Of a stretch of DNA of 24,940 bases, positions 2,241-22,319 are shown one piece after another. Within the stretch, counting starts at the first letter, position 1. Each line of letters begins with the position of its first letter. The position numbers and the translations under genes are program-made. A model generated the notes under the pieces. The model saw only the letters and a program-made list of their open reading frames with translations. It was not told the origin of the DNA and did no database searches. This DNA is from Octopus sinensis (taxonomy: Eukaryota): positions 1 through 24,940 of the forward strand of contig NW_021836225.1 in assembly GCF_006345805.1 (NCBI RefSeq), in the 5' to 3' direction.

Positions 2241-2506
2241 TGAACCTTGCAACGGACCGGCGTCCCGTTTATGGGAAATATTGCGATCTCGGTGCAAAAC
2301 CGGATAAGCGGCTTTATAAGTCCTCGAAAAATATAATGAGCCCCCACTTTAAACAGATTTAACAATCTACCGCCATTGAAGATGTTAAAAAAAGGAGGAT
2401 ATGTAACAAAGTCATTACCTAAGAATAAACAGAAGAAACTGAAAATAAATTGTACCCCACCCCCATCAACCAAAACAATAAGCTAACCTCAATAATAATA
2501 ATAATA

Positions 2507-2898
2507 ATGGTTTCAAATTTTGTCACAAAGGCAGCCATTTTGGGGGATGGGATGAGTCGATTACTTCGACCCCAGTTTTCAACTGGTACTTATTTTATCG
2601 ACATGGAAAGAATGAAAGGCAAAGTCGACCTCGGGAGAAATTGAACTCAGATCGGAGCGACGAGCGAAATACCGATTTCTTTACTACTCACAAGGGGCTA
2701 AACACAGAGGGGACAAACAAGGACAGACAAAGGGATTAAGTCGATTATATCGAGCCCAGTGCGTAACTGGTACTTAATTTATCGACCCTGAAAGGATGAA
2801 AGGCAAAGTCAACCTCGGCGGAATTTGAACTCGGAACGTAACGGCAGACGAAATACCGCTAAACATTTCCCCGGGGTGCTAACGTTTCTGCCACCGCT
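2507..2898 (-). mobile_element. SINE family 1: young head plus 184-bp module joined to a diverged older-type body
   Basis: Young module 2674-2857. Older diverged body 2507-2673 ends in AAATTTGAAACCATT(ATT)n. Junction at GGTATTTCG (2673). Confidence 0.85.
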
Positions 2899-2932
2899 TT
2901 AATAATAATATTAATAATAATAATAATAATAA

Positions 2933-3151
2933 CAATGGTTCCAAATTTTGGCACAAGGCCAGCAATTTCGAGAGTGGAGGCAAGTCGATTATAGCAACCT
3001 CAATGCTCAACTGGGGGTACTTATTGTACTGACCCCGAGGGGATGAAAATAAGGTCGACTTCACCGGAATTTGAACTCAGATCGCAAAGACGGACGAAAT
3101 GCCCCCAAAAGCATCTTTGCCTGGTATGCTGACGATTCTGCCAGCTTGCCG
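2933..3151 (-). mobile_element. Old SINE family 1 copy with (ATT)n tail
   Basis: The reverse complement has CGGCAAGCTGGCAGAATCGT, GAGTTCAAATTCC and GCTGGCCTTGTGCCAAAATTTGGAACCATT. Followed by the (AAT)n tract at ~2900-2932. Confidence 0.75.
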
Positions 3152-3419
3152 AATATAATCAGTTGAGATTGTATTGTCATGTGGCGAACAGAAGAGATAA
3201 GGTGGTGGTGGGCAAGGGAAGGGGGTGGGTGGGAGGGTGTGAAAAGGTTAGAATGACAGGAAATAATAACAGCGTCGTGGCAACATAAACCAACACACGT
3301 ATACAAACACAGACACACATATGTAAACAAACACACACACACACACATATACAAAGATAATACATACATACTACTACTACTACTACTACTACTACTAATA
3401 ATAATAATAATAATACGTA

Positions 3420-3965: not shown

Positions 3966-4447
3966 TTGCATACATACACATGAGATTAGCATCTCCCATT
4001 CCACACGTACTCACACTCACATACTCACGCGCGCGCGCACACACACACACACGCTCTCTCATTCTCTCTTTCTACTTCACCCTCTTTCCCCCATCTCTCT
4101 CTCTCACTCTTTCTTTCTCTGACTAAAAAAAAAAACACGGATGTACAGGGTACAACAAGAATGACACGGTTCACGTAAGTCGGCCATGTTTGAGTTTTGT
4201 CTGTTGCTAAAAGATGTCGGCTGTTGAGTGTGAAATGGTTCCTGGAGGACGGGGTCGCTAACTGAACGAGCCCCGACATTGCCGCAGCTGATATATTCTA
4301 TTTATTTGTTCATTTATGTATTTATTGATCTTTGTTTTTAGCTAGAAAGCGGGATAAGAGGGGAATGGCTACGGTTGCGAATTCTCGGAGCAAAAAAAAA
4401 AAAAAAAAGAAAAATCTGACGCACACACATACATATTAAACACACCC

Positions 4448-4836
4448 AGGAATGGCTGTGAGTTCTAGGTTCAGTCCCACTCCATGGCACCTTGGGCAAG
4501 TGTCTTCTACTATAACCTCCGGCTGACCAAAGCCTTGTGAGTAGATTTGGTAGATGGAAACTAAAAGAAACCTGTCATGTATATATATATATATTATATA
4601 TAATATATATATGCATGTGTGTGTGTGTGTGTCTGTGTTTGAGCCCCTCGACATCGCTTGACAACCAACGTTGGTGTGTTTACGTCTCTGTAACTTACCG
4701 GTTCGACATAATTTACCGATAGAATAAGTGCTATGCTTACAAGGAATAAGTCCCGGGGACGATTTGTTCGACTAAAGGCGGTGCTCCAGCATGGTCGCAG
4801 TCAAACGACTGAAACAAGTAAAAGAATAAAAGAATA
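4448..4836 (+). mobile_element. SINE family 2 with a deletion between the A and B boxes
   Basis: AGGAATGGCTGTG joined directly to AGTTCTAGGTTCAGTCCC; the rest of the body and the AAAAGAAT tail are present. Confidence 0.85.
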
Positions 4837-4954: not shown

Positions 4955-5083
4955 GTGTGTGGTGTGTGGTTGTGTGTGTGTGTACTCGATGAACTACGCA
5001 TGCACACACATACGTGTGTATGTACATTTATGTATGTATGTATGTATGTATGTATTATGTATGTATGTATGTATGTTATTATA

Positions 5084-5114
<31 letters not shown>

Positions 5115-5485
5115 CGTGTGTGTGTACTCGGTGACAAGGCCATACACACATATACATGTGTGTCTATATATATATATGTTTATATATATTATATATATGT
5201 ATATATATATATATCATATGTACATTCATATGCATATATATATAATATATATATGTATATATATATATAATAATATATATTTGTGTTGTATATATATATA
5301 ATATATATATATGTGTATATATATATATATAAATATGTATGCATATATTATTATTTTTATATATATATATATATATAATAATATATATATATACATATAT
5401 ATATATATACACATTATATATATATATATATAATACATATTATAATATACATATATATATATATTACATATATATATTTATATAC

Positions 5486-5519
<34 letters not shown>

Positions 5520-5526
5520 TATATAT

Positions 5527-5557
<31 letters not shown>

Positions 5558-5567
5558 TATATATATA
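4860..5567. repeat. Long degenerate (TA)n/(TATG)n/(TG)n low-complexity tract
   Basis: Directly visible. Confidence 0.95.
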
Positions 5568-6021: not shown

Positions 6022-6569
6022 GGTCAGGCAAAATGATCTGACACATTTGTAGGTTAAATAAACGGCAAATGAAGTAAAGAAACAAAAAAGTGTTTTTATT
6101 TTTGAAAAGTACATATAATGCCATTTTGCTTCATTATGTTTTAAAAATTAAATCAGTCAAATGGGATCCATTATTGTCCACACACTGTCGAGGCGTTCAC
6201 GAAAGTTGTCAATAACTCGGCGGGTCTTTCATGTGGAATGGCAGTATTTTCTTGACGAATTGCATCTTAAGTTCTGGCTGTGCGAGGTCGGTCGGTTGAT
6301 TTTCGTTTCAATGCAGATCCAGTAGCTCTGAAGTTGGTAACCATAACAAGATCGTGTTTCGAGCTGGTACGGGATCATGTCTACCAAGATTGAAGTGCAA
6401 ACGGAACGCTCTTTGTGTTGCAGTTACAGAATCGTTTGTTTTGATAAACGTTTCCACAATGAAAGCGCGATGCTCACCATTCCAATTCATGGCAGCAACT
6501 GAAAAAGAAACGAAAAACAATGCTTTTTATTTAACCTACAAATGTGTCAGATCATTTTGCCTGACCCTG
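6019..6569 (-). mobile_element. Non-autonomous, internally deleted Tc1/mariner transposon (551 bp)
   Basis: Perfect 44-bp TIRs (CAGGGTCAGGCAAAATGATCTGACACATTTGTAGGTTAAATAAA at 6019-6062; reverse complement at 6526-6569). TA on both sides, inserted in a (TA)n tract. Transposase remnants inside. Confidence 0.93.
6134..6490 (-). pseudogene. Mariner-type transposase remnant: N-terminal HTH fused to the C-terminus, catalytic domain deleted
   Basis: ATG at 6490: MNWNGEHRAFIVETFIKTNDSVTATQRAFRLHFNLGRHDPVPARNTILLW/VTNFRATGSALKRKSTDRPRTART. Then, with frameshifts, DAIRQENTAIPHE/RRVIDNFRERL/RQCVDNNGSHLTDLIFKT* (TAA 6136-6134). Resembles the DUF4817-type HTH and C-terminus of rosa/DD41D-like transposases (subfamily recalled, inferred). 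Confidence 0.85.
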
Positions 6570-8200: not shown

Positions 8201-8476
8201 ATTTAAATTCTTCCTCTGATGAAGGAGCTAGTTTCTAACAAAAATACAAAGCTCCGTCTTTGGAATGTAGATAACAAAAACAATGTCGCATTTTAAACTT
8301 GAGAAGAGTCTTATTCTAACTGTTCCATCTACAGATTGTATTTTTAGCGAGCGAGTTAAATGGTTGATTGCTTTTTCTGAAAACCCTAACCTACCCAGAT
8401 TGTCACTTAGGGATTTACTAAAAAATCCTAGTTGCACCAATCATTATTGGTATAGATCTGAATTTATAATCTAATA

Positions 8477-8888
8477 GGAGTGGCTGTGTGGTAAGTAGCT
8501 TGCTTACCAGCCACATGGTTCCGGGTTCAGTCCCACAGCGTGGTACCTTGGGCAAGTGTCTTCTACTATAGCCTCGGACTGACCAAAGCCTTGTGAGTGG
8601 ATTTGGTAGACGGAAACTGAAAGAAGCCCGTCTTATACGTGTATATATATGTATATGTATGCGTGTATATGTTTGTGTGTCTGTGTTTGTCCCCCAACAC
8701 ACTTGACAACTGATGCTGGTGTGTTTACGTCCCCATAACTTAGCGGTTCGGCAAAAGAGACCGATAGAATAAGTACTAGGCTTCCAAAAGAATAAGTCCT
8801 GGGGTCGATTTGCTCGACTAAAAGGTGGTGCTCCAGCATGGCCGCAGTCAAATGACTGAAACAAGTAAAAGAGTAGAGAGTAAAAGAG
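8477..8888 (+). mobile_element. Full-length tRNA-derived SINE (family 2)
   Basis: A-box-like TGGCTGTGTGG, B-box-like GGTTCAGTCCC, CCTTGGGCAAGTG (as in CORE-type SINEs), internal (TA)/(TG) tract, tail GACTGAAACAAGT(AAAAGAGT)n. Confidence 0.9.
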
Positions 8889-9199
8889 TAAATCGAAGCT
8901 GAAGGTTTCAAATCAATTATCAATATTTATCCTCTGATTGATTCACAAACAGATAATGACAATCAGCAGGACAGCTGAACTCAATGGCGGTACATACGTT
9001 TTCTTGTCTGTCCCTATAAATAATATCCGGTCTGTTATGTTTACACTTGACAGATGTTTTCACAGCAATGTTCTAACAGTATTCTTTGTGTTGATGTTTG
9101 TGTATGTATTCAATAACAGAGAGACTCTTTATACAGTCTTTTTTCTTTTTTACCGAAAGGCACCATATATTGTTTTTGCGGCAGCGTCATGTCACATAG

Positions 9200-10874: not shown

Positions 10875-11319
10875 GTAAGTGAAACGTGTCTGTAAATTTT
10901 TAAAAGGACTTCAATAATTAATTATATTTAACTGTAACTTTGTGAAACTTATCATCTAAGAATGTGCTTGGTCGAATCATCAGTGTATGTCAAAAGAAAT
11001 CGAAAACACAGACATTCGTAATAACGTCATTCTCAGAATATTGTGTCCACAGTCAAGGTTTTCACCTGATATACACTGGCGTCTCAGTCCGGGGCGATAT
11101 TCGTGTATTATTTCCTTAAAGTTAGGGAAAAATAGTGATCTAATGGGTTACGAAAATCTGTAAAATTCATGGAAAATATAACTAGGTTAAAAGACGAACC
11201 AGCGAATCGTCCGTTAACCCATGAATTTAGCTTGCTTCAATTTCTCACGGTTCCATGATTGAAAACTGAATTTCTTTCTGGTTGTTTTGATGATCCATTA
11301 TTATGGAGAAGTTATGTTA

Positions 11320-12560
11320 TGTCGAACTTGCAGAACCGTTAGCGCGTTGGACGAAATGCTTAGCGATATTTCGCTACGTTCTGAGTTCAAATTCCACCGA
11401 GGTCGACTTTGCCTTTAATTTTTTCGAGGTCGATAAAATAAGAACCAGTTGAACACTGGGGTCGATGTAATCGACTCATCCCCTCCTTCCCAAATTGTCC
11501 ATGAGGAAAAATTTGAAAACATTATTATGGTGAAGTTAAAATGCTTAGCGGCATTTCGTCCGTCTTGCGGTCTGAGTTCAAATTGTGCCGATTTTGACTT
11601 TGCATTTCATCTTTTCGGTTTGGATAAAACGAGTACCAGTTGAACACTGAGGTCGATTACATCTCCCGAAATTGCTGGCTTTGTGCCAAAATATGTAACT
11701 ATTATTATGGAGAAGTTTGAGGGCGACCAGCTGGCAGAATCGTTGGAGTGTCGAAAAAAAAAGCTTTCTGGCATTTGTTCCGACTCTACCTTCTGAGTTC
11801 AAAACCCACTGAGGTTAACTTAGCATTTTACCCATTCGAGGTCAATAAAATAACGTACCAGCCAAATACTTGTGTTGGGGGCAGTGGTTAACCACTCCAC
11901 TCAAAATTGTCGGCCTTGTCCCCAAATTAGAAATATTTTGAGAACAGTGAGTTGTTCTGGTTCTTTACATTCTGAGTTCCGAAGTTAACTTTGTCTTTCA
12001 TCCTTCCGGAGCCAAAAGAAAAAAAAAAACGAAAAATACCAGCCTTGTATGTGGGTCGATGGTAATTACTAACCATCTAAGGCGGCGAGCTGGCAGAAAC
12101 GTTAGCACGCCGGGCGAAATGCTTTGTGGTATTTCGTCCTCCGCTGCGTTCTGAGTTCAAATTCCGCCGAGGTCAACTTTGCCTTTCATCCTTTCGGTGT
12201 CGATTAAATAAGTACCAGTTACGCACTGGGGTCGATATAATCGACTTAATCCGTTTGTCTGTCCTTGTTTGCCTCCTCTGTGTTTAGCCCCTTGTGGGTA
12301 GTAAAGAAATAGGTATTTCATCTGTCGTTACGTTCTGAGTTCAAACTCCGCTGAGGTCGACTTTGCCTTTCATCCTTTTGTGGGCGATTAAATAAGTACC
12401 AGTTACGCACTGGGGTCGATATCCGTTTGTCGATAATCCGTTTGTCTGTCCTTGTTTGTTCCCTCTGTGTTTAGCCCCTTGTGGGTAGTAAAGAAATAGG
12501 TAGTTACTAACCATCTTCGTTAGAAACTGCTGGCCTTGTGCTTAAATTAGAAACCATTAT
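11320..12560 (+). mobile_element. Head-to-tail cluster of four old family-1 SINE copies, the last interrupted by the young dimer
   Basis: Repeated GAGTTCAAA / GAGGTCGACTTTGC / GTCGATAAAATAAGTACCAG / GGCCTTGTG motifs at ~11320-11520, 11539-11700, 11719-11935, and 11955-12078 plus 12517-12560. Confidence 0.8.
12079..12498 (+). mobile_element. Young tRNA-derived SINE (family 1), dimeric: head plus two ~184-bp modules
   Basis: Head AAGGCGGCGAGCTGGCAGAAACGTTAG (A-box-like) and GAGTTCAAATTCC (B-box-like). Modules 12128-12311 and 12312-12498. 18-bp TSD GGTA(A/G)TTACTAACCATCT at 12061-12078 and 12499-12516. Confidence 0.9.
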
Positions 12561-13119
12561 TATGTAGGAGTTCTAAAGTTGATCTTGGTTAAATGAAAAC
12601 CTGTTTTGCTTGTCCGTTATCTCTGAACACCTATTTTAACACGCCTCGTGTTATCTGCTCTTTTTCCTCGTTAATGAAGTCAGCTAGATTAACCTTCTCC
12701 CCTTCCACCCACAAATCTCTTTTTTCACATCTAACATCACTTCCTCTCTCTCTCTCTCTCTCTCTGTCTTAACCTTTCCCTCTCTTTCTCCTTTTTTTTT
12801 GCTTTTCTTTTCTTTATATTGCTTCTGGAATTTACACTCTCCCTTTTTTGGATTCCTTTGAAGAATTTTTTTTATTTTAGCTCAGAATACACCAAAAATT
12901 CCTGAAAGAGGAAGAAAATATCTGAAGACCTTATCTAACTAACGACAACAAAAAATAACAACAACAACAACAACAACTCCATAGTAAAAAAAAAAAGAAC
13001 AAGAAGCAGAAAATAAGCGAAGTATTAGTTTAAATACGAAAACAAAACTGACTAAACACAAAACAAATAACTACTAAACAAGATTATTAAATAAACAACA
13101 AACTACAATAATACGATCG

Positions 13120-13151
13120 CTACTACAAATAATAATAACAACAACAACAAC

Positions 13152-13191
<40 letters not shown>

Positions 13192-13320
13192 TAATAATAA
13201 TAATATAATAATAATAATAAAAGTAATAATAATGATAATAATAATGATAATAATGATAATAATAATAATAATAATGATAATAATAAAAGTAATAATAATA
13301 ATAATAAAAATAATACTGAT
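13120..13320. repeat. (AAT)n/(AAC)n microsatellite
   Basis: Directly visible. Confidence 0.95.
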
Positions 13321-13850
13321 AGTAATGGAAATCTGTAAGATACTTTGTTTGCAGACGGTTTTGAAACGTGCTGCCCGAAACTTTACACACTTTCCGACAT
13401 ATGGCTTGTATTTCTAAGCAGTTGATTAACAAGTGACAGGATCCCTCTAACACCCTACAGGTTTACCCTTCCGTTTGACTCCCAACTGTTTTACTTTTTT
13501 CAATGAAATTCTTCATCATTGGATAGGGATGGTATCTGGCACGGGTACTCTTGTTTCTTTTAACGCTTGCTAATAATTACCTAGCAAAGTGGGGCCACGC
13601 ACGATATAAAAATAACCCTTAATTAAATAACCTGATAACGGTTTGTTATTCTAATTAACACCCGGCAAGAAATATAAACGGGTGGGGTATCCTCTTAGCT
13701 AATTACCACACATCGTAGTGTTAACCATTATTAATAGTTTTTTGATATACTCTAAAACATTGCACGAGCTTCAAGAAATAGTAGCAAAATAACCCTCTTG
13801 TCACGCACAGACCGTCTATTAAATAGGAAGGACGCATTAGATGATATATT

Positions 13851-14097
13851 ATCTTTTACTTGATCCAGCCATTGGACTGCGGCCATGCTGGTACACCGCC
13901 TTGATGGGTTTTTGTTGGAAAAGTTGACCCCTCCAACTACTTATGTTTATTGTTTTGTTTTATTTTTATATAGTTTAAGTCTGGTTCTAATACTATCTTC
14001 ACCTTTGCTGAACTGCTATGTTACGGGGACGTTAACGAAACAACACCGGTTGTCAAGCGGTGGGTGGGTGATAATCAAACACATACACACGCACAGA
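13851..14097 (-). mobile_element. Degraded 3' part of SINE family 2
   Basis: TGGACTGCGGCCATGCTGG, TTACGGGGACGTTAAC, CCGGTTGTCAAGCG. Confidence 0.65.
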
Positions 14098-14384
14098 GTA
14101 TTTCAGTATTTTACAGTTCCCTTCTTCAATCAAAATACAATTGAAATACTGCATACATACCTAACTGGTGGCGGGTTGATTGATATAACCATATGGTTCA
14201 GCGCTACCCGTTAAAAAGTCACCGTTTACAGAATGAGGATAACAACGTAGCTTTCGCGCCCATGCAACCGCCAGTCTACCGCGTCCGGTGGGTGGATCTT
14301 CAAGTTGCCACACGCATTCTTAGTAGCTTAGAGTAGGCTCGAATTAGAGATTATTCTTTGTGGCCTATGGTGTGAGTTCTGATT

Positions 14385-14483
14385 AGAAGAAGAAGAAGAA
14401 GAAAAAGGAGAAGAAGAAGAAGAAGAAGAAGAAGAAGAAGAAGAAGAAGAAGAAGAAGAAGAAGAAGAAGAAGAAGAAGAAGA
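14385..14483. repeat. (GAA)n tract with one interruption
   Basis: Directly visible; interrupted at ~14401-14409. Confidence 0.95.
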
Positions 14484-14546
14484 CAATAGCAACAGAACTA
14501 GCAGTAGTAGCAACAAAGAGAAGACAACTACTACAGCAACAATACC

Positions 14547-14960
14547 TATTTCTTTACTACCCAAAAGGGACTAAACACAGAGAGGACAAACAAGGACAGA
14601 CAAACGGATTAAGTCGATTATATCGACCCCAGTGCGTAACTATTACTTATTTAATCGACCCCGAAAGGATGAAAGGTAAAGTTGACCTCGGCGGAATTTG
14701 AACTCAAAATGCAGCGGCAGACGAAATACCTATTTCTTTACTACCCACAAGGGGCTAAATACAGAGAGGACAAACAAGGATAGACAAACGGATTAAGTCG
14801 ATTATATCGACCCCAGTGTGTAACTAGTACTTATTTAATCGACCCCGAAAGGATGAAAGGCAAAGTCGACCTCGGCGGAATTTGAACTCACAACGTAACG
14901 ACAGACGAAATACCGCTAAGCATTTCGCCCGGCGTGCTAACGTTTCTGCCAGCTCGCCGC
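14547..14960 (-). mobile_element. Young SINE family 1, dimeric
   Basis: Modules 14731-14914 and 14547-14730 (184 bp each). Perfect 16-bp TSD CTACAGCAACAATACC at 14531-14546 and 14961-14976. Confidence 0.9.
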
Positions 14961-15427
14961 CTACAGCAACAATACCGACAACCATTTCAACAAATACAAC
15001 AGCAAATACAACAACAACATCGACCCAAATTTATCAAGGTTACTTACTACACAAGAGTGTGTGACGCTCATACTTACCGTCAGTTGAATGAGTACAATAA
15101 TGTTATAATCCAGGGCGTGAACTCCACTCATTGGGGTCTTAAACACCACTCAATAGCTTCGGTAGTTCCCTTTCTTTTATTATACAAATATATGTATTCA
15201 AACTAGTATTCTTTAATAAGCATAAATTCCCACAAGCCTACCGAGTTTCTACTCATTGACTCCGAAATGATTAACTCCATGCTTGTCAACTGTCTTTTCA
15301 CACACACTCAAGATTTTTGCATTTCCGTTTCCGGTTTGCTGATTGTTTTGTTTCATTCCATAGAATATTCTGGATCACTCTTTGTCTTATTTATTCTTGT
15401 ATGTACATGTCTATATATTTCTAGGGC

Positions 15428-15573: not shown

Positions 15574-15750
15574 CTCTTTTACTTGTTTCAGTCATTTGAG
15601 GACCACCTTTAGTCGAGCAAATCGATCCCGGGACTTATTCTTTGTAAGCCCAGTACTTATTCTATCGGTCTCTTTTGCCGAACCGCTAAGTTACGGGGAC
15701 GTAAACACACCAACATCGGTTGTCAAGCAATGCTAGGTAGACAAACACAG

Positions 15751-15781
<31 letters not shown>

Positions 15782-15958
15782 CATACATATATACGGCGGG
15801 CTTCTTTCAGTTTCCGTCTTACAAATCCACTCACAAGGCATTGGTCGGCCCGGGGGCTATAGTAGAAGACACTTGCCCAGGATGCCACGCAGTGGGACTG
15901 AACCCGGAACCATGTGGTTGGTTAGCAAGCTACTTACCACACAGCCACTCCTGCGCCT
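15574..15958 (-). mobile_element. Full-length SINE family 2
   Basis: Near-complete reverse complement of 8477-8888, with a short deletion near the tail. Confidence 0.9.
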
Positions 15959-16170
15959 ATATATAATTGAAAAAAAAACAAAACAAGAAAGAGTACTGCT
16001 GGACATTTATTTTTTAATCACTACAATTGTTTCCACGCAACGTATTTCTCCAGGCGTACAAGTATTTGATTAAGCAACCACTTCCTTCCGTTATGATATC
16101 TAGTCGTGTTTCCTCATGTGATATCTAAATATTGCTTCCATAAGTTCAAAATCCTCAAAGACAATATATA

Positions 16171-16426
16171 CTCTTTTTACTCTTTACTTGTTTCAGTCAT
16201 TTGAAAGTGGCCATGCTGGAGCACCGCCTTTAGTCGAGCAAATCGACCCAGGACTTATTCTTTGTAAGCCGAGTGCTTATTCTATCGGTCTTTTTTGCCG
16301 AACCGCGAAGTTAAACACACCAGCATCGGTTGTCAAGCGATGTTGGGGAGACAAACACGGACACACAAACATACACACACACACACATACACACACAAAC
16401 ACACAGACAGACAGACAGACAGACAG

Positions 16427-16457
<31 letters not shown>

Positions 16458-16616
16458 CATACATATATACGGCGGGCTTCTTTCAGTTTCCATCTACCAA
16501 ATCCATTCACAAGACTTTGGTCGGCCCGAGGCTATAGTAGAAGACACTTACCCAAGGTGCCACGCAATGGGACTGAACCCGGAACCATGTGGTCTGTAAG
16601 CAAGCTACTTACCACA
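16171..16616 (-). mobile_element. SINE family 2, slightly 5'-truncated, expanded internal microsatellite
   Basis: Reverse complement of the family consensus. Internal (CA)n(CAGA)n(TA)n at ~16360-16470. Confidence 0.88.
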
Positions 16617-16794: not shown

Positions 16795-17051
16795 ACGTTT
16801 GTATGTATGTATGTATGTATGTATGTATGTATGTATGTATGTATGTATGTATGTATGTATGTTTGTATGTATGTATGTATGTATGTACGTAGGTATGTAT
16901 GCATGTATGTTTGTATGTATGTATGTTTGTATGTATGTATGTATGTATGTATGTATGTATGTACGTAGGTATGTATGCACATATGTTTGTATGTATGTAT
17001 ATATGTATGTATGTATATATGTATGTATGTATGTATGACTGTATGTATGTA

Positions 17052-17080
<29 letters not shown>
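16795..17080. repeat. (TATG)n microsatellite ending in (CT)n
   Basis: Directly visible. Confidence 0.95.
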
Positions 17081-20862: not shown

Positions 20863-21260
20863 AAGGCAGCGAGCTGGCAGAAACGTTAGCACGCCGGGCG
20901 AAATGTTTACCGGTATTTCGTCTGCCGTTACGTTCTGAGTTCAAATTCCGCCGAGGTCGACATTGCCTTTCAGCTTTTCGGGGTCGATTAAATAAGTAAT
21001 AGTTACGCACTTGGGTCGATATAATCGACTTAATCCGTTTGTCTGTCCTTGTTTGTCCTCTCTGTGTTTAGCCCCTTGGGGGTAGTAAAGAAATAAGTAT
21101 TTTGTCTGCCGTTACGTTCTGAGTTCAAATTCCGCCGAGGTTGACTTTGCCTTTCTTCCTTTCTGGGTCGATAAATTAAGTACCAGTTGCGTACTGGGGT
21201 CGATCTAATCGATGGGCCTCTTCCCCCAAAATTTCGGGCCTTGTGCCTAGAGTAGAAAAG
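20863..21260 (+). mobile_element. Young SINE family 1, head plus module plus second module with a different tail
   Basis: Head at 20863. First module ends GTAGTAAAGAAATA (~21095). Second restarts AGTATTTTGTCTGCCG and ends CCCCCAAAATTTCGGGCCTTGTGCCTAGAGTAGAAAAG. Confidence 0.88.
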
Positions 21261-21726
21261 ATATATATATATATATATATAATACAAGGTGTGTAGTATT
21301 ATATACGTACAATGGTAGAAAGCCTGTCATGTCTACAGGAGAAGTGGGTTCCGGTCCCCTCGTAAGCCTTCGACTTTTTCTACCTAAACTTTTTTTCAAC
21401 GCTTCATTTACATGCTGTTATTTATAGCTTTATGTGATGTGCCTCGAGAGCCGCTATTCCAAAAAAGATTCTTTCATGTTCTCTCGAAAGTTTATGACGT
21501 CAACAATGTGTATGTGATTATGTTGATTAACCGACTGATCGCAGAAACCGACGTGAGACCGTTTACTTTGCGTGCGTTATGAGAGAATGAATATGTATGA
21601 AGGTGACAAGTTCACGGGTGTATGTGTTAAGGAATATGTTAAAGAAAATTAGGGTAGAGATAATATATATGTGTGTGAGTCAGAGACGCTTTGCGGGTGG
21701 ATGATAAAGTACGTGGGAGAATGAGA

Positions 21727-21884: not shown

Positions 21885-22060
21885 CTTTCTTTTATATTTC
21901 AGTTGTTTAAGTCATTGGACTACGGTCGTAATTTATCGACCTCGAAAGGACGAAAGGCAAAGTCGACCTCGGAGGAATTTGAACCCAGAACGTAACGGCA
22001 TAGGAAATACGGCTACGCATTTCGCCCGGCGTGCTAACGTTTTGGCCAGCTCGTCGCCTT
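21885..22060 (-). mobile_element. SINE with a family-1 head and a family-2-type tail
   Basis: Family-1 head and domain at 22060-21929, fused to GACCGTAGTCCAATGACTTAAACAACTGAAATATAAAAGA, which resembles the family-2 tail GGCCGCAGTCAAATGACTGAAACAAGTAAAAGA. Confidence 0.7.
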
Positions 22061-22319
22061 ATAACGTTGCTATAATGCAAAAGTTTTATTAGTCCAAAAC
22101 GTTTCTTTTTCAGAAAGCGAAAAAATAGCTCCACCATTCCATAGTAAAACCGTTGTATTTCTCTTTGACAACTTTTGGTATCTTGGCATCTGAAGCAGCT
22201 GAAGATACTATAGTTTTACCAAACAAATATCGTAAAAAAAAAAAACCCACTCGGCCAGTTTAGCATAACAACAATAGCAACTATATATATATATATATAT
22301 ATACACAAATTAAACTTAG

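What the first reader, a model, noticed from the sequence alone, without database searches (positions are those of the whole stretch)
12061..14976. SINE family 1 appears to insert specifically at 5'-GGTA
Seen: the young element ends ...GTAGTAAAGAAATA (one copy AAATC) and is followed by GGTA at 5 of 6 junctions. Four of the six are internal module junctions (12312, 14730, 2673, and 21096 which reads AGTA); only two are genomic insertion sites (12499, 14546). At both genomic sites GGTA is also in the upstream TSD copy (GGTAATTACTAACCATCT 12061-12078; TACC at 14973-14976), so it was in the target DNA before insertion. Established: TPRT by APE-type non-LTR elements can use endonuclease preference or 3'-end microhomology. 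Inference: this SINE and its unknown partner LINE prefer GGTA(W)T sites, which would be unusual for a SINE. Two independent genomic sites are a small sample.
Basis: partly seen in the sequence, partly recalled or inferred. Interest (0 to 1): 0.7.

Follow-up and report, generated by a model that had tools for sequence, protein, structure and literature searches.

The report
Octopus SINE lands at GGTAWT sites
A young octopus SINE is followed by GGTA at nearly all of its 3' ends, most likely because its RNA ends in a short sequence that must pair with the DNA that primes its copying; this is a stronger case of a known retroposon habit, seen here in very few copies.

Summary
Six family-1 tails (...GTAGTAAAGAAATA, one AAATC) lie in the window. 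Five are followed by GGTA and one by AGTA.

The two genomic insertions have clean target-site duplications (TSDs) that both start GGTAWT: E is 18 bp (17/18 identical) and F is 14 bp (14/14). Chance gives about 8e-6 for GGTA at both sites.

The four internal "junctions" are not ordinary target sites. There, GGTA is the SINE's own position 50 (GGTATTTCG), where a second, head-less SINE unit of family 1, 2 or 3 begins. A seventh tail, fetched from Octopus vulgaris, has the same junction.

E and F carry their two subfamily modules in opposite order, so they are not copies of one dimeric master.

Best reading: family-1 RNA ends ...AAAUA-GGUAUUU. Reverse transcription is primed by any DNA 3' end that pairs with this. 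That can be a nicked GGTAWTT target or a nascent SINE cDNA that has reached position 50 (template switch).

The main rival is a GGTAWT-specific endonuclease with nested insertion. These data cannot exclude it.

The two sister tail families in the same window also insert into sequence matching their own (ATT)n tails. The habit is known for CR1, L2 and RTE partners.

The sample is seven tails, and no further octopus DNA could be fetched.

The parts
12061..12078 (+). 5' TSD copy of element E, GGTAATTACTAACCATCT. It lies inside an old family-2 SINE copy (D4).
12079..12311 (+). E unit 1: tRNA-like head plus body plus family-1 tail ...GTAGTAAAGAAATA. It carries subfamily markers shared with F unit 2.
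12312..12498 (+). E unit 2: a head-less unit starting at SINE position 50 (GGTATTTCATCTG) and ending in a family-1 tail.
12499..12516 (+). 3' TSD copy of E, GGTAGTTACTAACCATCT (17/18 identical to the 5' copy).
11951..12060 (+). 5' part of the old family-2 SINE copy D4 that E interrupted. The rest is at 12517-12580. The target GAT|GGTAATTACT corresponds to family-2 GAT-GTAATCGACT.
14963..14976 (-). 5' TSD copy of element F. In element orientation it reads GGTATTGTTGCTGT.
14731..14962 (-). F unit 1: head plus body plus family-1 tail.
14547..14730 (-). F unit 2: head-less, starts GGTATTTCGTCTG, ends in a family-1 tail. The 184-bp period x2 is seen by TRF, and the repeat register runs 6 bases (GGTATT) into the 3' flank.
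14533..14546 (-). 3' TSD copy of F (14/14 identical to the 5' copy).
2674..2897 (-). Composite A unit 1: family-1 head, body and tail (AAATC variant).
2490..2673 (-). Composite A unit 2: head-less family-2 unit starting GGTATTTCGCTCG and ending GAAACC(ATT)n. The whole composite sits in the (ATT)n tail of family-2 copy B (2898-3160).
20863..21095 (+). Composite G unit 1: family-1 head, body and tail.
21096..21283 (+). Composite G unit 2: head-less family-3 unit starting AGTATTTTG (a T4 run 5 nt after the family-1 tail) and ending ...CCTAGAGTAGAAAAG(AT)n.
12288..12298 (+). Tail stem-loop CCC-CTTGT-GGG. The equivalent in families 2 and 3 is GGC-CTTGT-GCC, so the difference is compensatory.

Best explanation
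Family 1 is a tRNA-like, LINE-dependent octopus SINE. Its functional 3' end is not ...AAAUA but ...AAAUA-GGUAUUU(U).

Reverse transcription of this RNA starts only on a DNA 3' end that can pair with that terminal stretch. Two kinds of primer qualify.
1. The nicked bottom strand of a genomic site reading GGTAWTT. This gives a TSD that begins GGTAWT, as in E and F.
2. The growing cDNA of any SINE of this superfamily, once it has copied down to the SINE's own position 50-56 (GGTATTT). This is a template switch. It gives 'head + unit + tail | GGTATTTCG... head-less unit', as in E, F, A, G and the O. vulgaris copy.

A plausible source of such RNA is a composite locus in which the downstream GGTATTTCG has decayed at its CpG to GGTATTTTG. 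That creates a Pol III terminator just after the tail.

Shown: the TSDs, the target motif, the position-50 junctions, the swapped module order, and the tail-to-target matching of the sister families.

Inferred: the RNA 3' end, the pairing requirement, the template switch and the terminator idea.
For: 1. Both genomic TSDs start GGTAWT and match GGTATTT at 6 of 7 positions.
2. All 5 internal junctions (4 in the window, plus L001 24118/24117 in O. vulgaris) join the tail to exactly SINE position 50. No TSD is visible at these junctions. In E, positions 50-70 of the two units differ at several positions, while the outer TSD is 17/18 identical.
3. The downstream unit belongs to three different tail families. 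In E and F the subfamily order is swapped: E1 and F2 share linked markers at alignment columns 17, 19 and 48, and E2 and F1 share column 14. The junction was therefore made repeatedly and is not inherited from one dimer.
4. Composite A has no family-2 head upstream of the family-1 unit, which a simple nested insertion would leave.
5. Other family-2-like copies read GGCATT (B, D2, D3, C) or GATATTTCG (D1) at position 50. Only the unit fused to a family-1 tail (A2) reads GGTATTTCG. This is expected if GGU is copied from the family-1 RNA end.
6. Sister families behave the same way. Four family-2 units with different 5' truncations are each separated by CATTATTATGGAGAAGTT (11280-12580). A, which has an (ATT)n tail, lies in B's (ATT)n tail.
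7. The G junction AGTATTTTG has a T4 run 5 nt after the tail.
8. The tail has a small stem-loop with compensatory changes between families (85.7% of cells paired, 0 of 500 shuffles reach this). This is the hairpin-plus-terminal-repeat layout of CR1-type tails (PMC5729268).
9. [quoted passage not shown]
Against: - There are only two independent genomic sites and seven tails in 49 kb.
- There is no direct evidence on where the SINE RNA ends.
- Most junctions read GGTATTTCG, with T3 rather than a T4 terminator.
- No monomeric family-1 copy was seen, although the model predicts some.
- Exactly one switch in 5 of 5 loci is only moderately likely.
- Unit 2 is slightly more diverged than unit 1 in both E (8.7% versus 4.9%) and F (5.4% versus 3.3%). 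This trend would also fit an older target element, i.e. nested insertion.
- The O. vulgaris locus has an unexplained order of pieces (91-232, then 50-108, then 1-46).
- The final DNA product is the same whether pairing or endonuclease specificity selects the site.
Confidence: 0.45

Rival explanations
1. Endonuclease specificity with nested insertion. The partner LINE's endonuclease nicks preferentially at N|GGTAWT. Because SINEs make up over 10% of octopus DNA and carry GGTATTTCG at position 50, many insertions land inside older SINE copies. The 5' junction is then resolved by annealing of the new cDNA to the homologous head of the target copy, leaving an apparently perfect 'head + unit + unit' with no inner TSD.
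For: - The same target motif is seen at the genomic sites and at position 50.
- E itself landed in an old SINE.
- O. vulgaris SINEs are 11.6% of the genome (PMC13282606), so position-50 sites are a sizeable share of all GGTATT sites.
- Unit 2 is somewhat more diverged than unit 1 in E and F.
- In F the first 13 bases of both units are identical, compatible with a TSD.
- Site-specific non-LTR elements are well known (PMC4640811).
Against: - No locus shows the expected head-TSD-head arrangement (0 of 5).
- In A the whole head looks like family 1, and no family-2 head lies upstream.
- In E positions 50-70 of the two units differ too much to be a TSD.
- The family-2 unit in A has GGTA where other family-2-like copies have GGCA or GATA.
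- The (ATT)n and (AT)n sister families show tail-matched targets, which argues for RNA pairing as the shared rule.
Confidence: 0.3
2. Fixed complex SINE plus coincidence. Family 1 is simply a dimeric or composite SINE whose master already contains the tail-GGTATTTCG junction. The GGTA at the two genomic sites is a chance or small-sample effect.
For: - Dimeric SINE families are common (SINEBase definitions, PMC3531059).
- TRF sees a clean 184-bp period x2 in F.
- A1 and the O. vulgaris copy share the AAATC-GGTATTTCG variant, so some junctions may be inherited.
Against: - The probability that both TSDs start with the pre-specified GGTA is about 8e-6.
- Module order is swapped between E and F, and three different tail families serve as the downstream unit. 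One master cannot explain these junctions.
Confidence: 0.05
3. Internal priming on long composite transcripts. There is no dedicated 3' end. Long read-through RNAs of composite loci are primed at their internal AAAUA-GGUAUUUCG junction by targets that happen to pair there, giving 3'-truncated copies that end in AAATA followed by target GGTA.
For: It rests on the same pairing logic and the same data as the best explanation. It would also explain why no T4 run is needed at most junctions.
Against: - It needs trimeric or longer templates for E and F.
- The tail has its own conserved stem-loop just upstream of AAATA, as expected for a genuine reverse-transcription start region.
- It does not explain why the composites form.
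Confidence: 0.1

Closest known systems
RTE-, CR1- and L2-type LINE/SINE pairs whose 3'-terminal microsatellite-like sequence overlaps the first bases of the TSD (Nishiyama & Ohshima 2018, PMC6007223)
   Same: The first bases of the TSD equal the sequence that ends, or immediately follows, the element. The same SINE body with different terminal repeats shows different target starts. Here families 1, 2 and 3 give GGTAWT, (ATT)n and AT-rich starts respectively.
   Different: The reported overlap is one to several bases and involves simple repeats. Here it is 4-7 bases of a non-repetitive motif that is also an internal sequence of the SINE. The T-stretch-plus-10-nt RTE signature is not seen at E.
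CR1-mobilised SINEs with a hairpin plus terminal microsatellite, and chimeric SINEs made by template switching (TguSINE1/PittSINE, PMC5729268)
   Same: The tail has a small conserved hairpin followed by a short terminal sequence. Mosaic elements are explained by reverse-transcriptase template switching during target-primed reverse transcription.
   Different: Here the switch point is the same base (position 50) in five loci and looks homology-guided. No partner LINE was found, so CR1 ancestry of the tail is untested.
Site-specific non-LTR retrotransposons whose read-through RNA carries downstream target sequence that pairs with the nicked target, such as R1Bm, SART1, I factor and R2Ol (cited in PMC6007223, section 18), and microsatellite-targeting RLE clades such as R4/Dong (PMC4640811)
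   Same: RNA that ends in target-like sequence homes to that sequence, and every insertion regenerates the site. The family-2 array at 11280-12580 looks like repeated homing to one (ATT)n site.
   Different: Those are autonomous LINEs with long, unique targets such as rDNA or telomeres. Here it is a SINE with a short degenerate motif, and its TSDs (14 and 18 bp) are ordinary.
Alu/L1 TT|AAAA preference
   Same: SINE target choice is inherited from the partner's endonuclease plus pairing of the RNA tail (A-tract to T-tract).
   Different: The motif is not homopolymeric, and the tail is not poly(A).
Octopus tRNA-derived SINEs OK, OR1 and OR2 (Ohshima & Okada 1994, cited in PMC4824008) and the 'unclassified SINE' families of the O. 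vulgaris repeat annotation (PMC13282606)
   Same: The host is the same (the SINE ORF hits only an O. bimaculoides protein, and the same element is in O. vulgaris). It has a tRNA-like head with A-box-like and B-box-like motifs and is very abundant.
   Different: No consensus library was available, so I could not tell which named family this is. I found no published statement on its target sites.

Membership tests
Retroposed SINE copy made by target-primed reverse transcription | Flanked by direct target-site duplications, and the empty site can be reconstructed | tested here: met
   E has an 18-bp TSD (17/18) and F a 14-bp TSD (14/14). The joined flanks of E restore a colinear family-2 copy.
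tRNA-derived SINE | Head recognisable as a tRNA with internal Pol III A and B boxes | tested here: inconclusive
   By eye there is a B-box-like GAGTTCAAATTCC and an A-box-like GCTGGCAGAA. The 5' GGCGG can pair with CCGCC after the B box. ARAGORN found no tRNA and Rfam gave no tRNA hit even at E<=10.
Stringent-type LINE-dependent SINE (CR1/L2/RTE-like tail) | 3' stem-loop recognised by the partner's reverse transcriptase, followed by a short terminal repeat | tested here: met
   The (G/T)GGC-CTTGT-GCC(T/A) stem in families 2 and 3 becomes GCCC-CTTGT-GGGT in family 1. 85.7% of cells are paired, the covariation score is 0.56 versus 0.18 in shuffles, and 0 of 500 shuffles reach it. This amounts to about two family-level events, so the support is modest.
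Stringent-type LINE-dependent SINE (CR1/L2/RTE-like tail) | Tail sequence shared with an autonomous LINE in the same genome | not testable with these tools
   There is no LINE with this tail in the window or L001. The only LINE 3' end seen (L001 23248-23590, RTE-like) ends in (GATA)3 with an unrelated tail. The octopus genome was not searchable.
Target-sequence-specific retroposon | Nearly all independent insertions have the same sequence at the insertion point, present before insertion | tested here: inconclusive
   2 of 2 genomic sites have GGTAWT in the upstream TSD copy. 5 of 5 other tails abut SINE position 50 (GGTATTTCG or AGTATTTTG). The sample is too small for a logo.
Fixed dimeric (complex) SINE family | All copies descend from one dimeric master, with the same units in the same order | tested here: not met
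   E is subfamily a followed by b, and F is b followed by a (columns 14, 17, 19 and 48 of alignment A1). In A and G the downstream units belong to families 2 and 3.
R4/Dong-type microsatellite-targeting system (considered for family 2 only) | Insertion into (TAA)n/(ATT)n repeats by an RLE-encoding LINE | not tested
   Family-2 copies end in (ATT)n and lie in ATT-containing targets. Dong-R4 is the most active LINE group in O. vulgaris (PMC13282606). No LINE sequence was available to link them.

The most novel reading that the evidence does not exclude
Family 1 is a 'SINE that rides on other SINEs'. Its RNA ends in a copy of the superfamily's own position-50 motif, and a CpG-decay-born Pol III terminator (GGTATTTCG to GGTATTTTG) fixes that end. 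It is therefore preferentially reverse-transcribed from the nascent cDNA of any related SINE. This builds composite elements in a single event and continually regenerates its own source-gene structure. Genomic GGTAWTT sites are only the secondary primer. That would be a directly observable, homology-guided mechanism for the 'jigsaw' modular evolution of SINEs.
Probability: 0.2. Interest if true: 0.6.

Novelty: new variant of a known kind. Interest (0 to 1): 0.4.

Why it matters
If the preference holds genome-wide, it would be one of the clearest cases of a SINE's target choice and its tendency to form composite elements being set by a short non-repetitive 3'-terminal homology. That would link two textbook but poorly documented steps of non-LTR retrotransposition: priming by RNA-target pairing, and template switching. 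Octopus genomes are 10% or more SINE, and SINE and LINE activity there is under discussion for brain biology, so knowing where the young families can land also has practical value for annotation and insertion-polymorphism calling. If it does not hold, this is an ordinary SINE with two coincidentally similar TSDs.

Tried and rejected
1. More copies from public collections. Exact-pattern scans for the family-1 tail and for the conserved B-box region in metagenome, GTDB-genome and viral contigs gave 0 hits each.

2. A protein route to octopus DNA.
- The SINE-derived ORF hit only one UniRef O. bimaculoides protein, which has no recorded locus.
- A rhodopsin query gave one usable octopus protein (P0002) and one 24.3-kb O. 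vulgaris locus, L001. L001 holds a single further family-1 tail.
- An RTE C-terminal fragment from L001 returned 7 proteins, none identifiable as octopus.
- Two window ORFs are not on record.

3. Literature. A full-text search for the SINE sequence strings found nothing. I found no paper on octopus SINE target sites.

4. tRNA identity of the head. ARAGORN and Rfam found nothing.

5. Rejected readings.
- GGTA belongs only to the element's 3' end and the TSDs are 4 bp shorter. Rejected because GGTA is also at the far end of the upstream TSD copy at both sites.
- Simple nested insertion with a visible inner TSD. This is not seen in any of the 5 composites.
- One dimeric master. The module order is swapped between E and F.
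- The 6071-6084 pattern match was not examined. It did not appear among the SINE BLAST hits.

6. Relative ages of units 1 and 2. The counts are too small to discriminate between the models.
Full report
**What the window is.**
- The 24.9-kb window is AT-rich (GC 25-43%), non-coding and repeat-laden animal DNA.
- A peptide translated from the SINE's minus strand hits a single protein among 5.8 billion, an uncharacterised Octopus bimaculoides protein.
- The same SINE occurs in the Octopus vulgaris rhodopsin locus that I fetched as L001 (GCA_951406725.2, OX597836.1).
- The host is therefore an octopus.

**The observation.**
- Pattern search and direct reading confirm six family-1 tails (...GTAGTAAAGAAATA, once AAATC) at 12298-12311(+), 12485-12498(+), 14731-14744(-), 14547-14560(-), 2674-2687(-) and 21082-21095(+).
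- Two elements have unambiguous TSDs.
  - E (12079-12498, +) is flanked by GGTAATTACTAACCATCT and GGTAGTTACTAACCATCT.
  - F (14547-14962, -) is flanked, in its own orientation, by GGTATTGTTGCTGT twice.
- Removing E and one TSD copy restores a colinear old SINE of another family, so E is a real insertion.
- GGTA occurs at 0.28% of non-SINE positions and GGTAWT at 0.05%. Both TSDs starting that way by chance is about 8e-6 and 3e-7 respectively.

**Anatomy.** BLAST of one unit against the window and alignments show three related SINE families. They share a tRNA-like head and body and differ after ...AATCGACT.
- Family 1 has a 65-nt segment ending ...TTTAGCCCCTTGTGGGTAGTAAAGAAATA.
- Family 2 ends ...CTGGCCTTGTGCCAAAATTTGAAACC(ATT)n.
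- Family 3 ends ...CGGGCCTTGTGCCTAGAGTAGAAAAG followed by an AT-rich repeat.
- The tails are homologous and share a small hairpin with an invariant CTTGT loop.
- The hairpin stem reads GGC/GCC in families 2 and 3 and CCC/GGG in family 1, which is a compensatory change.
- Hairpin plus short terminal repeat is the layout described for CR1-type tails (PMC5729268).
- I found no LINE with this tail. The one LINE 3' end in L001 is RTE-like, ends in (GATA)3 and is unrelated.

**The internal junctions.** Every family-1 locus is a composite: head + unit + family-1 tail, immediately followed by a second, head-less unit.
- That second unit starts at the SINE's own position 50, GGTATTTCG, which lies between the A-box-like and B-box-like motifs.
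- It is family 1 in E and F, family 2 in A (2490-2673) and family 3 in G (21096-21283).
- The O. vulgaris copy (L001 24118-24259) has the same tail-to-position-50 junction.
- At these junctions, then, GGTA is SINE sequence and not anonymous target DNA.
- E unit 1 and F unit 2 share three linked markers, and E unit 2 and F unit 1 share another.
- The same two subfamilies are therefore joined in opposite order, and the junction has been made repeatedly. A single dimeric master is excluded.

**How it most likely works.** Three facts point to base pairing with the SINE RNA's 3' end.
- First, the genomic targets resemble not just GGTA but GGTATTT (GGTAATT and GGTATTG, 6 of 7 each). That is the sequence that follows the tail in every composite. 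TRF even extends F's 184-bp register 6 bases into the flank.
- Second, the sister families insert into sequence matching their own terminal repeats.
  - Four family-2 units with different 5' truncations are each separated by CATTATTATGGAGAAGTT (11280-12580).
  - Composite A, which ends in (ATT)n, sits in the (ATT)n tail of copy B.
- Third, other family-2-like copies read GGCATT (four copies) or GATATTTCG (one) at position 50. Only the unit fused to a family-1 tail reads GGTATTTCG, as if GGU had been copied from the family-1 RNA.

I therefore propose the following.
- Family-1 RNA ends ...AAAUA-GGUAUUU(U).
- It is primed either by a nicked GGTAWTT site or by a nascent SINE cDNA that has reached position 50, which is a template switch.
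- A CpG-to-TpG change turns GGTATTTCG into GGTATTTTG, as seen at G's junction. This places a T4 Pol III terminator 5 nt after the tail, so composite loci could be the source genes of exactly such RNA.
- Only the DNA facts are shown. The RNA end, the pairing requirement and the switch are inferred.

**Rivals.**
- A GGTAWT-specific endonuclease with nested insertion into older SINEs, and homology-mediated 5' resolution, fits most of the data. It is mildly favoured by the slightly higher divergence of unit 2.
- It is disfavoured in three ways.
  - The head-TSD-head arrangement is absent from all five composites.
  - Composite A has an all-family-1 head with no family-2 head upstream.
  - The GGTA-versus-GGCA contrast is not explained.
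- Chance, or a fixed dimer, is effectively excluded.
- The sequences in hand cannot separate pairing from endonuclease specificity, because both give the same product.

**Comparison with the known.**
- Overlap between the element's 3' terminus and the first TSD bases, and correlation of terminal microsatellites with the TSD start, are established for CR1, L2 and RTE LINEs and their SINEs (PMC6007223).
- RNA-target pairing is used by site-specific LINEs, as cited in that paper.
- RLE clades target microsatellites (PMC4640811).
- Template switching is the accepted origin of chimeric SINEs (PMC5729268).
- The octopus case differs in three ways. The motif is longer and non-repetitive. It is identical to an internal SINE sequence. 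It has an apparent role in building composites.
- I file it as a new variant of a known kind, provisionally.

**Limits.**
- Only seven tails in 49 kb could be examined.
- All routes to more octopus DNA failed or were exhausted.
- The decisive tests are a genome-wide TSD logo, orthologous empty sites, RNA 3'-end mapping and identification of the partner LINE. They are listed separately.

Noticed in passing
window 11280-12580: A head-to-tail array of four old family-2 SINE units with different 5' starts (about positions 8, 39, 1 and 70). Each is followed by the same CATTATTATGG(A/T)GAAGTT linker, which also precedes the first unit. It looks like repeated insertion into one (ATT)n-containing site with the TSD regenerated each time. 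The last unit is the one E later interrupted.
   Followed up: partly
window 2490-3160 (minus strand): Composite A, which ends in (ATT)n, lies directly in the (ATT)n tail of another family-2 copy, B. The target therefore again matches the inserted element's tail.
   Followed up: partly
window 12288-12298, 21237-21247, 2950-2960; L001 7456-7466, 22511-22521: A small tail hairpin with an invariant CTTGT loop. Its stem is GGC/GCC in families 2 and 3 and CCC/GGG in family 1, a compensatory change. It is probably the partner reverse transcriptase's recognition site.
   Followed up: yes
window 21096-21104: The junction reads AGTATTTTG instead of GGTATTTCG. The C-to-T change is at a CpG and creates a T4 run (a potential Pol III terminator) 5 nt after a family-1 tail.
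   Followed up: partly
L001 24005-24262 (minus strand), Octopus vulgaris: An odd composite with pieces in this order: a 5'-truncated family-1 unit (positions 91-232, tail AAATC), then SINE positions 50-108, then AAAA plus head positions 1-46, then non-SINE DNA. No TSD was found. The order of the pieces is unexplained.
   Followed up: partly
L001 23248-23590 (+): A 5'-truncated RTE-like LINE 3' end. Its ORF2 C-terminus reads ...GKRGRGRPRTRWLDTIKSD..., it ends in (GATA)3, and it is flanked by the TSD ATGTCTAAAG. Its tail is unrelated to the SINE tails.
   Followed up: partly
window 21929-22062 (minus strand): A SINE copy with the same head and body up to about position 132. It then continues into a different 3' part that resembles another abundant repeat of the window (...GTAGTCCAATGACTTAAACAAC...). 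This is a mosaic, 'jigsaw' SINE.
   Followed up: no
window 4341-4771(-), 8421-8926(-), 15613-16070(+), 16122-16600(+); L001 19276-19690(-), 20055-20507(+): A second abundant repeat family unrelated to the SINE in question. It is recognisable by recurring translated stretches (...RRASFSFHLPNP.TRLWS.RGYSRRHLPKVPR.GTEPGTMW...). It is interrupted by microsatellites and present several times in both species' loci.
   Followed up: no
L001 11600-11645 (minus strand), rhodopsin intron: A roughly 35-bp solitary match to the family-2 tail (GGCCTTGTGCCAAAATTTGAGACC) with no SINE body upstream. It is either an extremely 5'-truncated SINE or a fragment of the partner LINE's 3' end.
   Followed up: partly
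window 13128-13326, 14385-14483, 5029-5567, 16800-17052: Long microsatellites: (AAT)67, (AGA)33, (TA)n/(TATATATG)n and (TGTA)63. The (AGA)33 array lies about 60 bp from F's 3' end.
   Followed up: no
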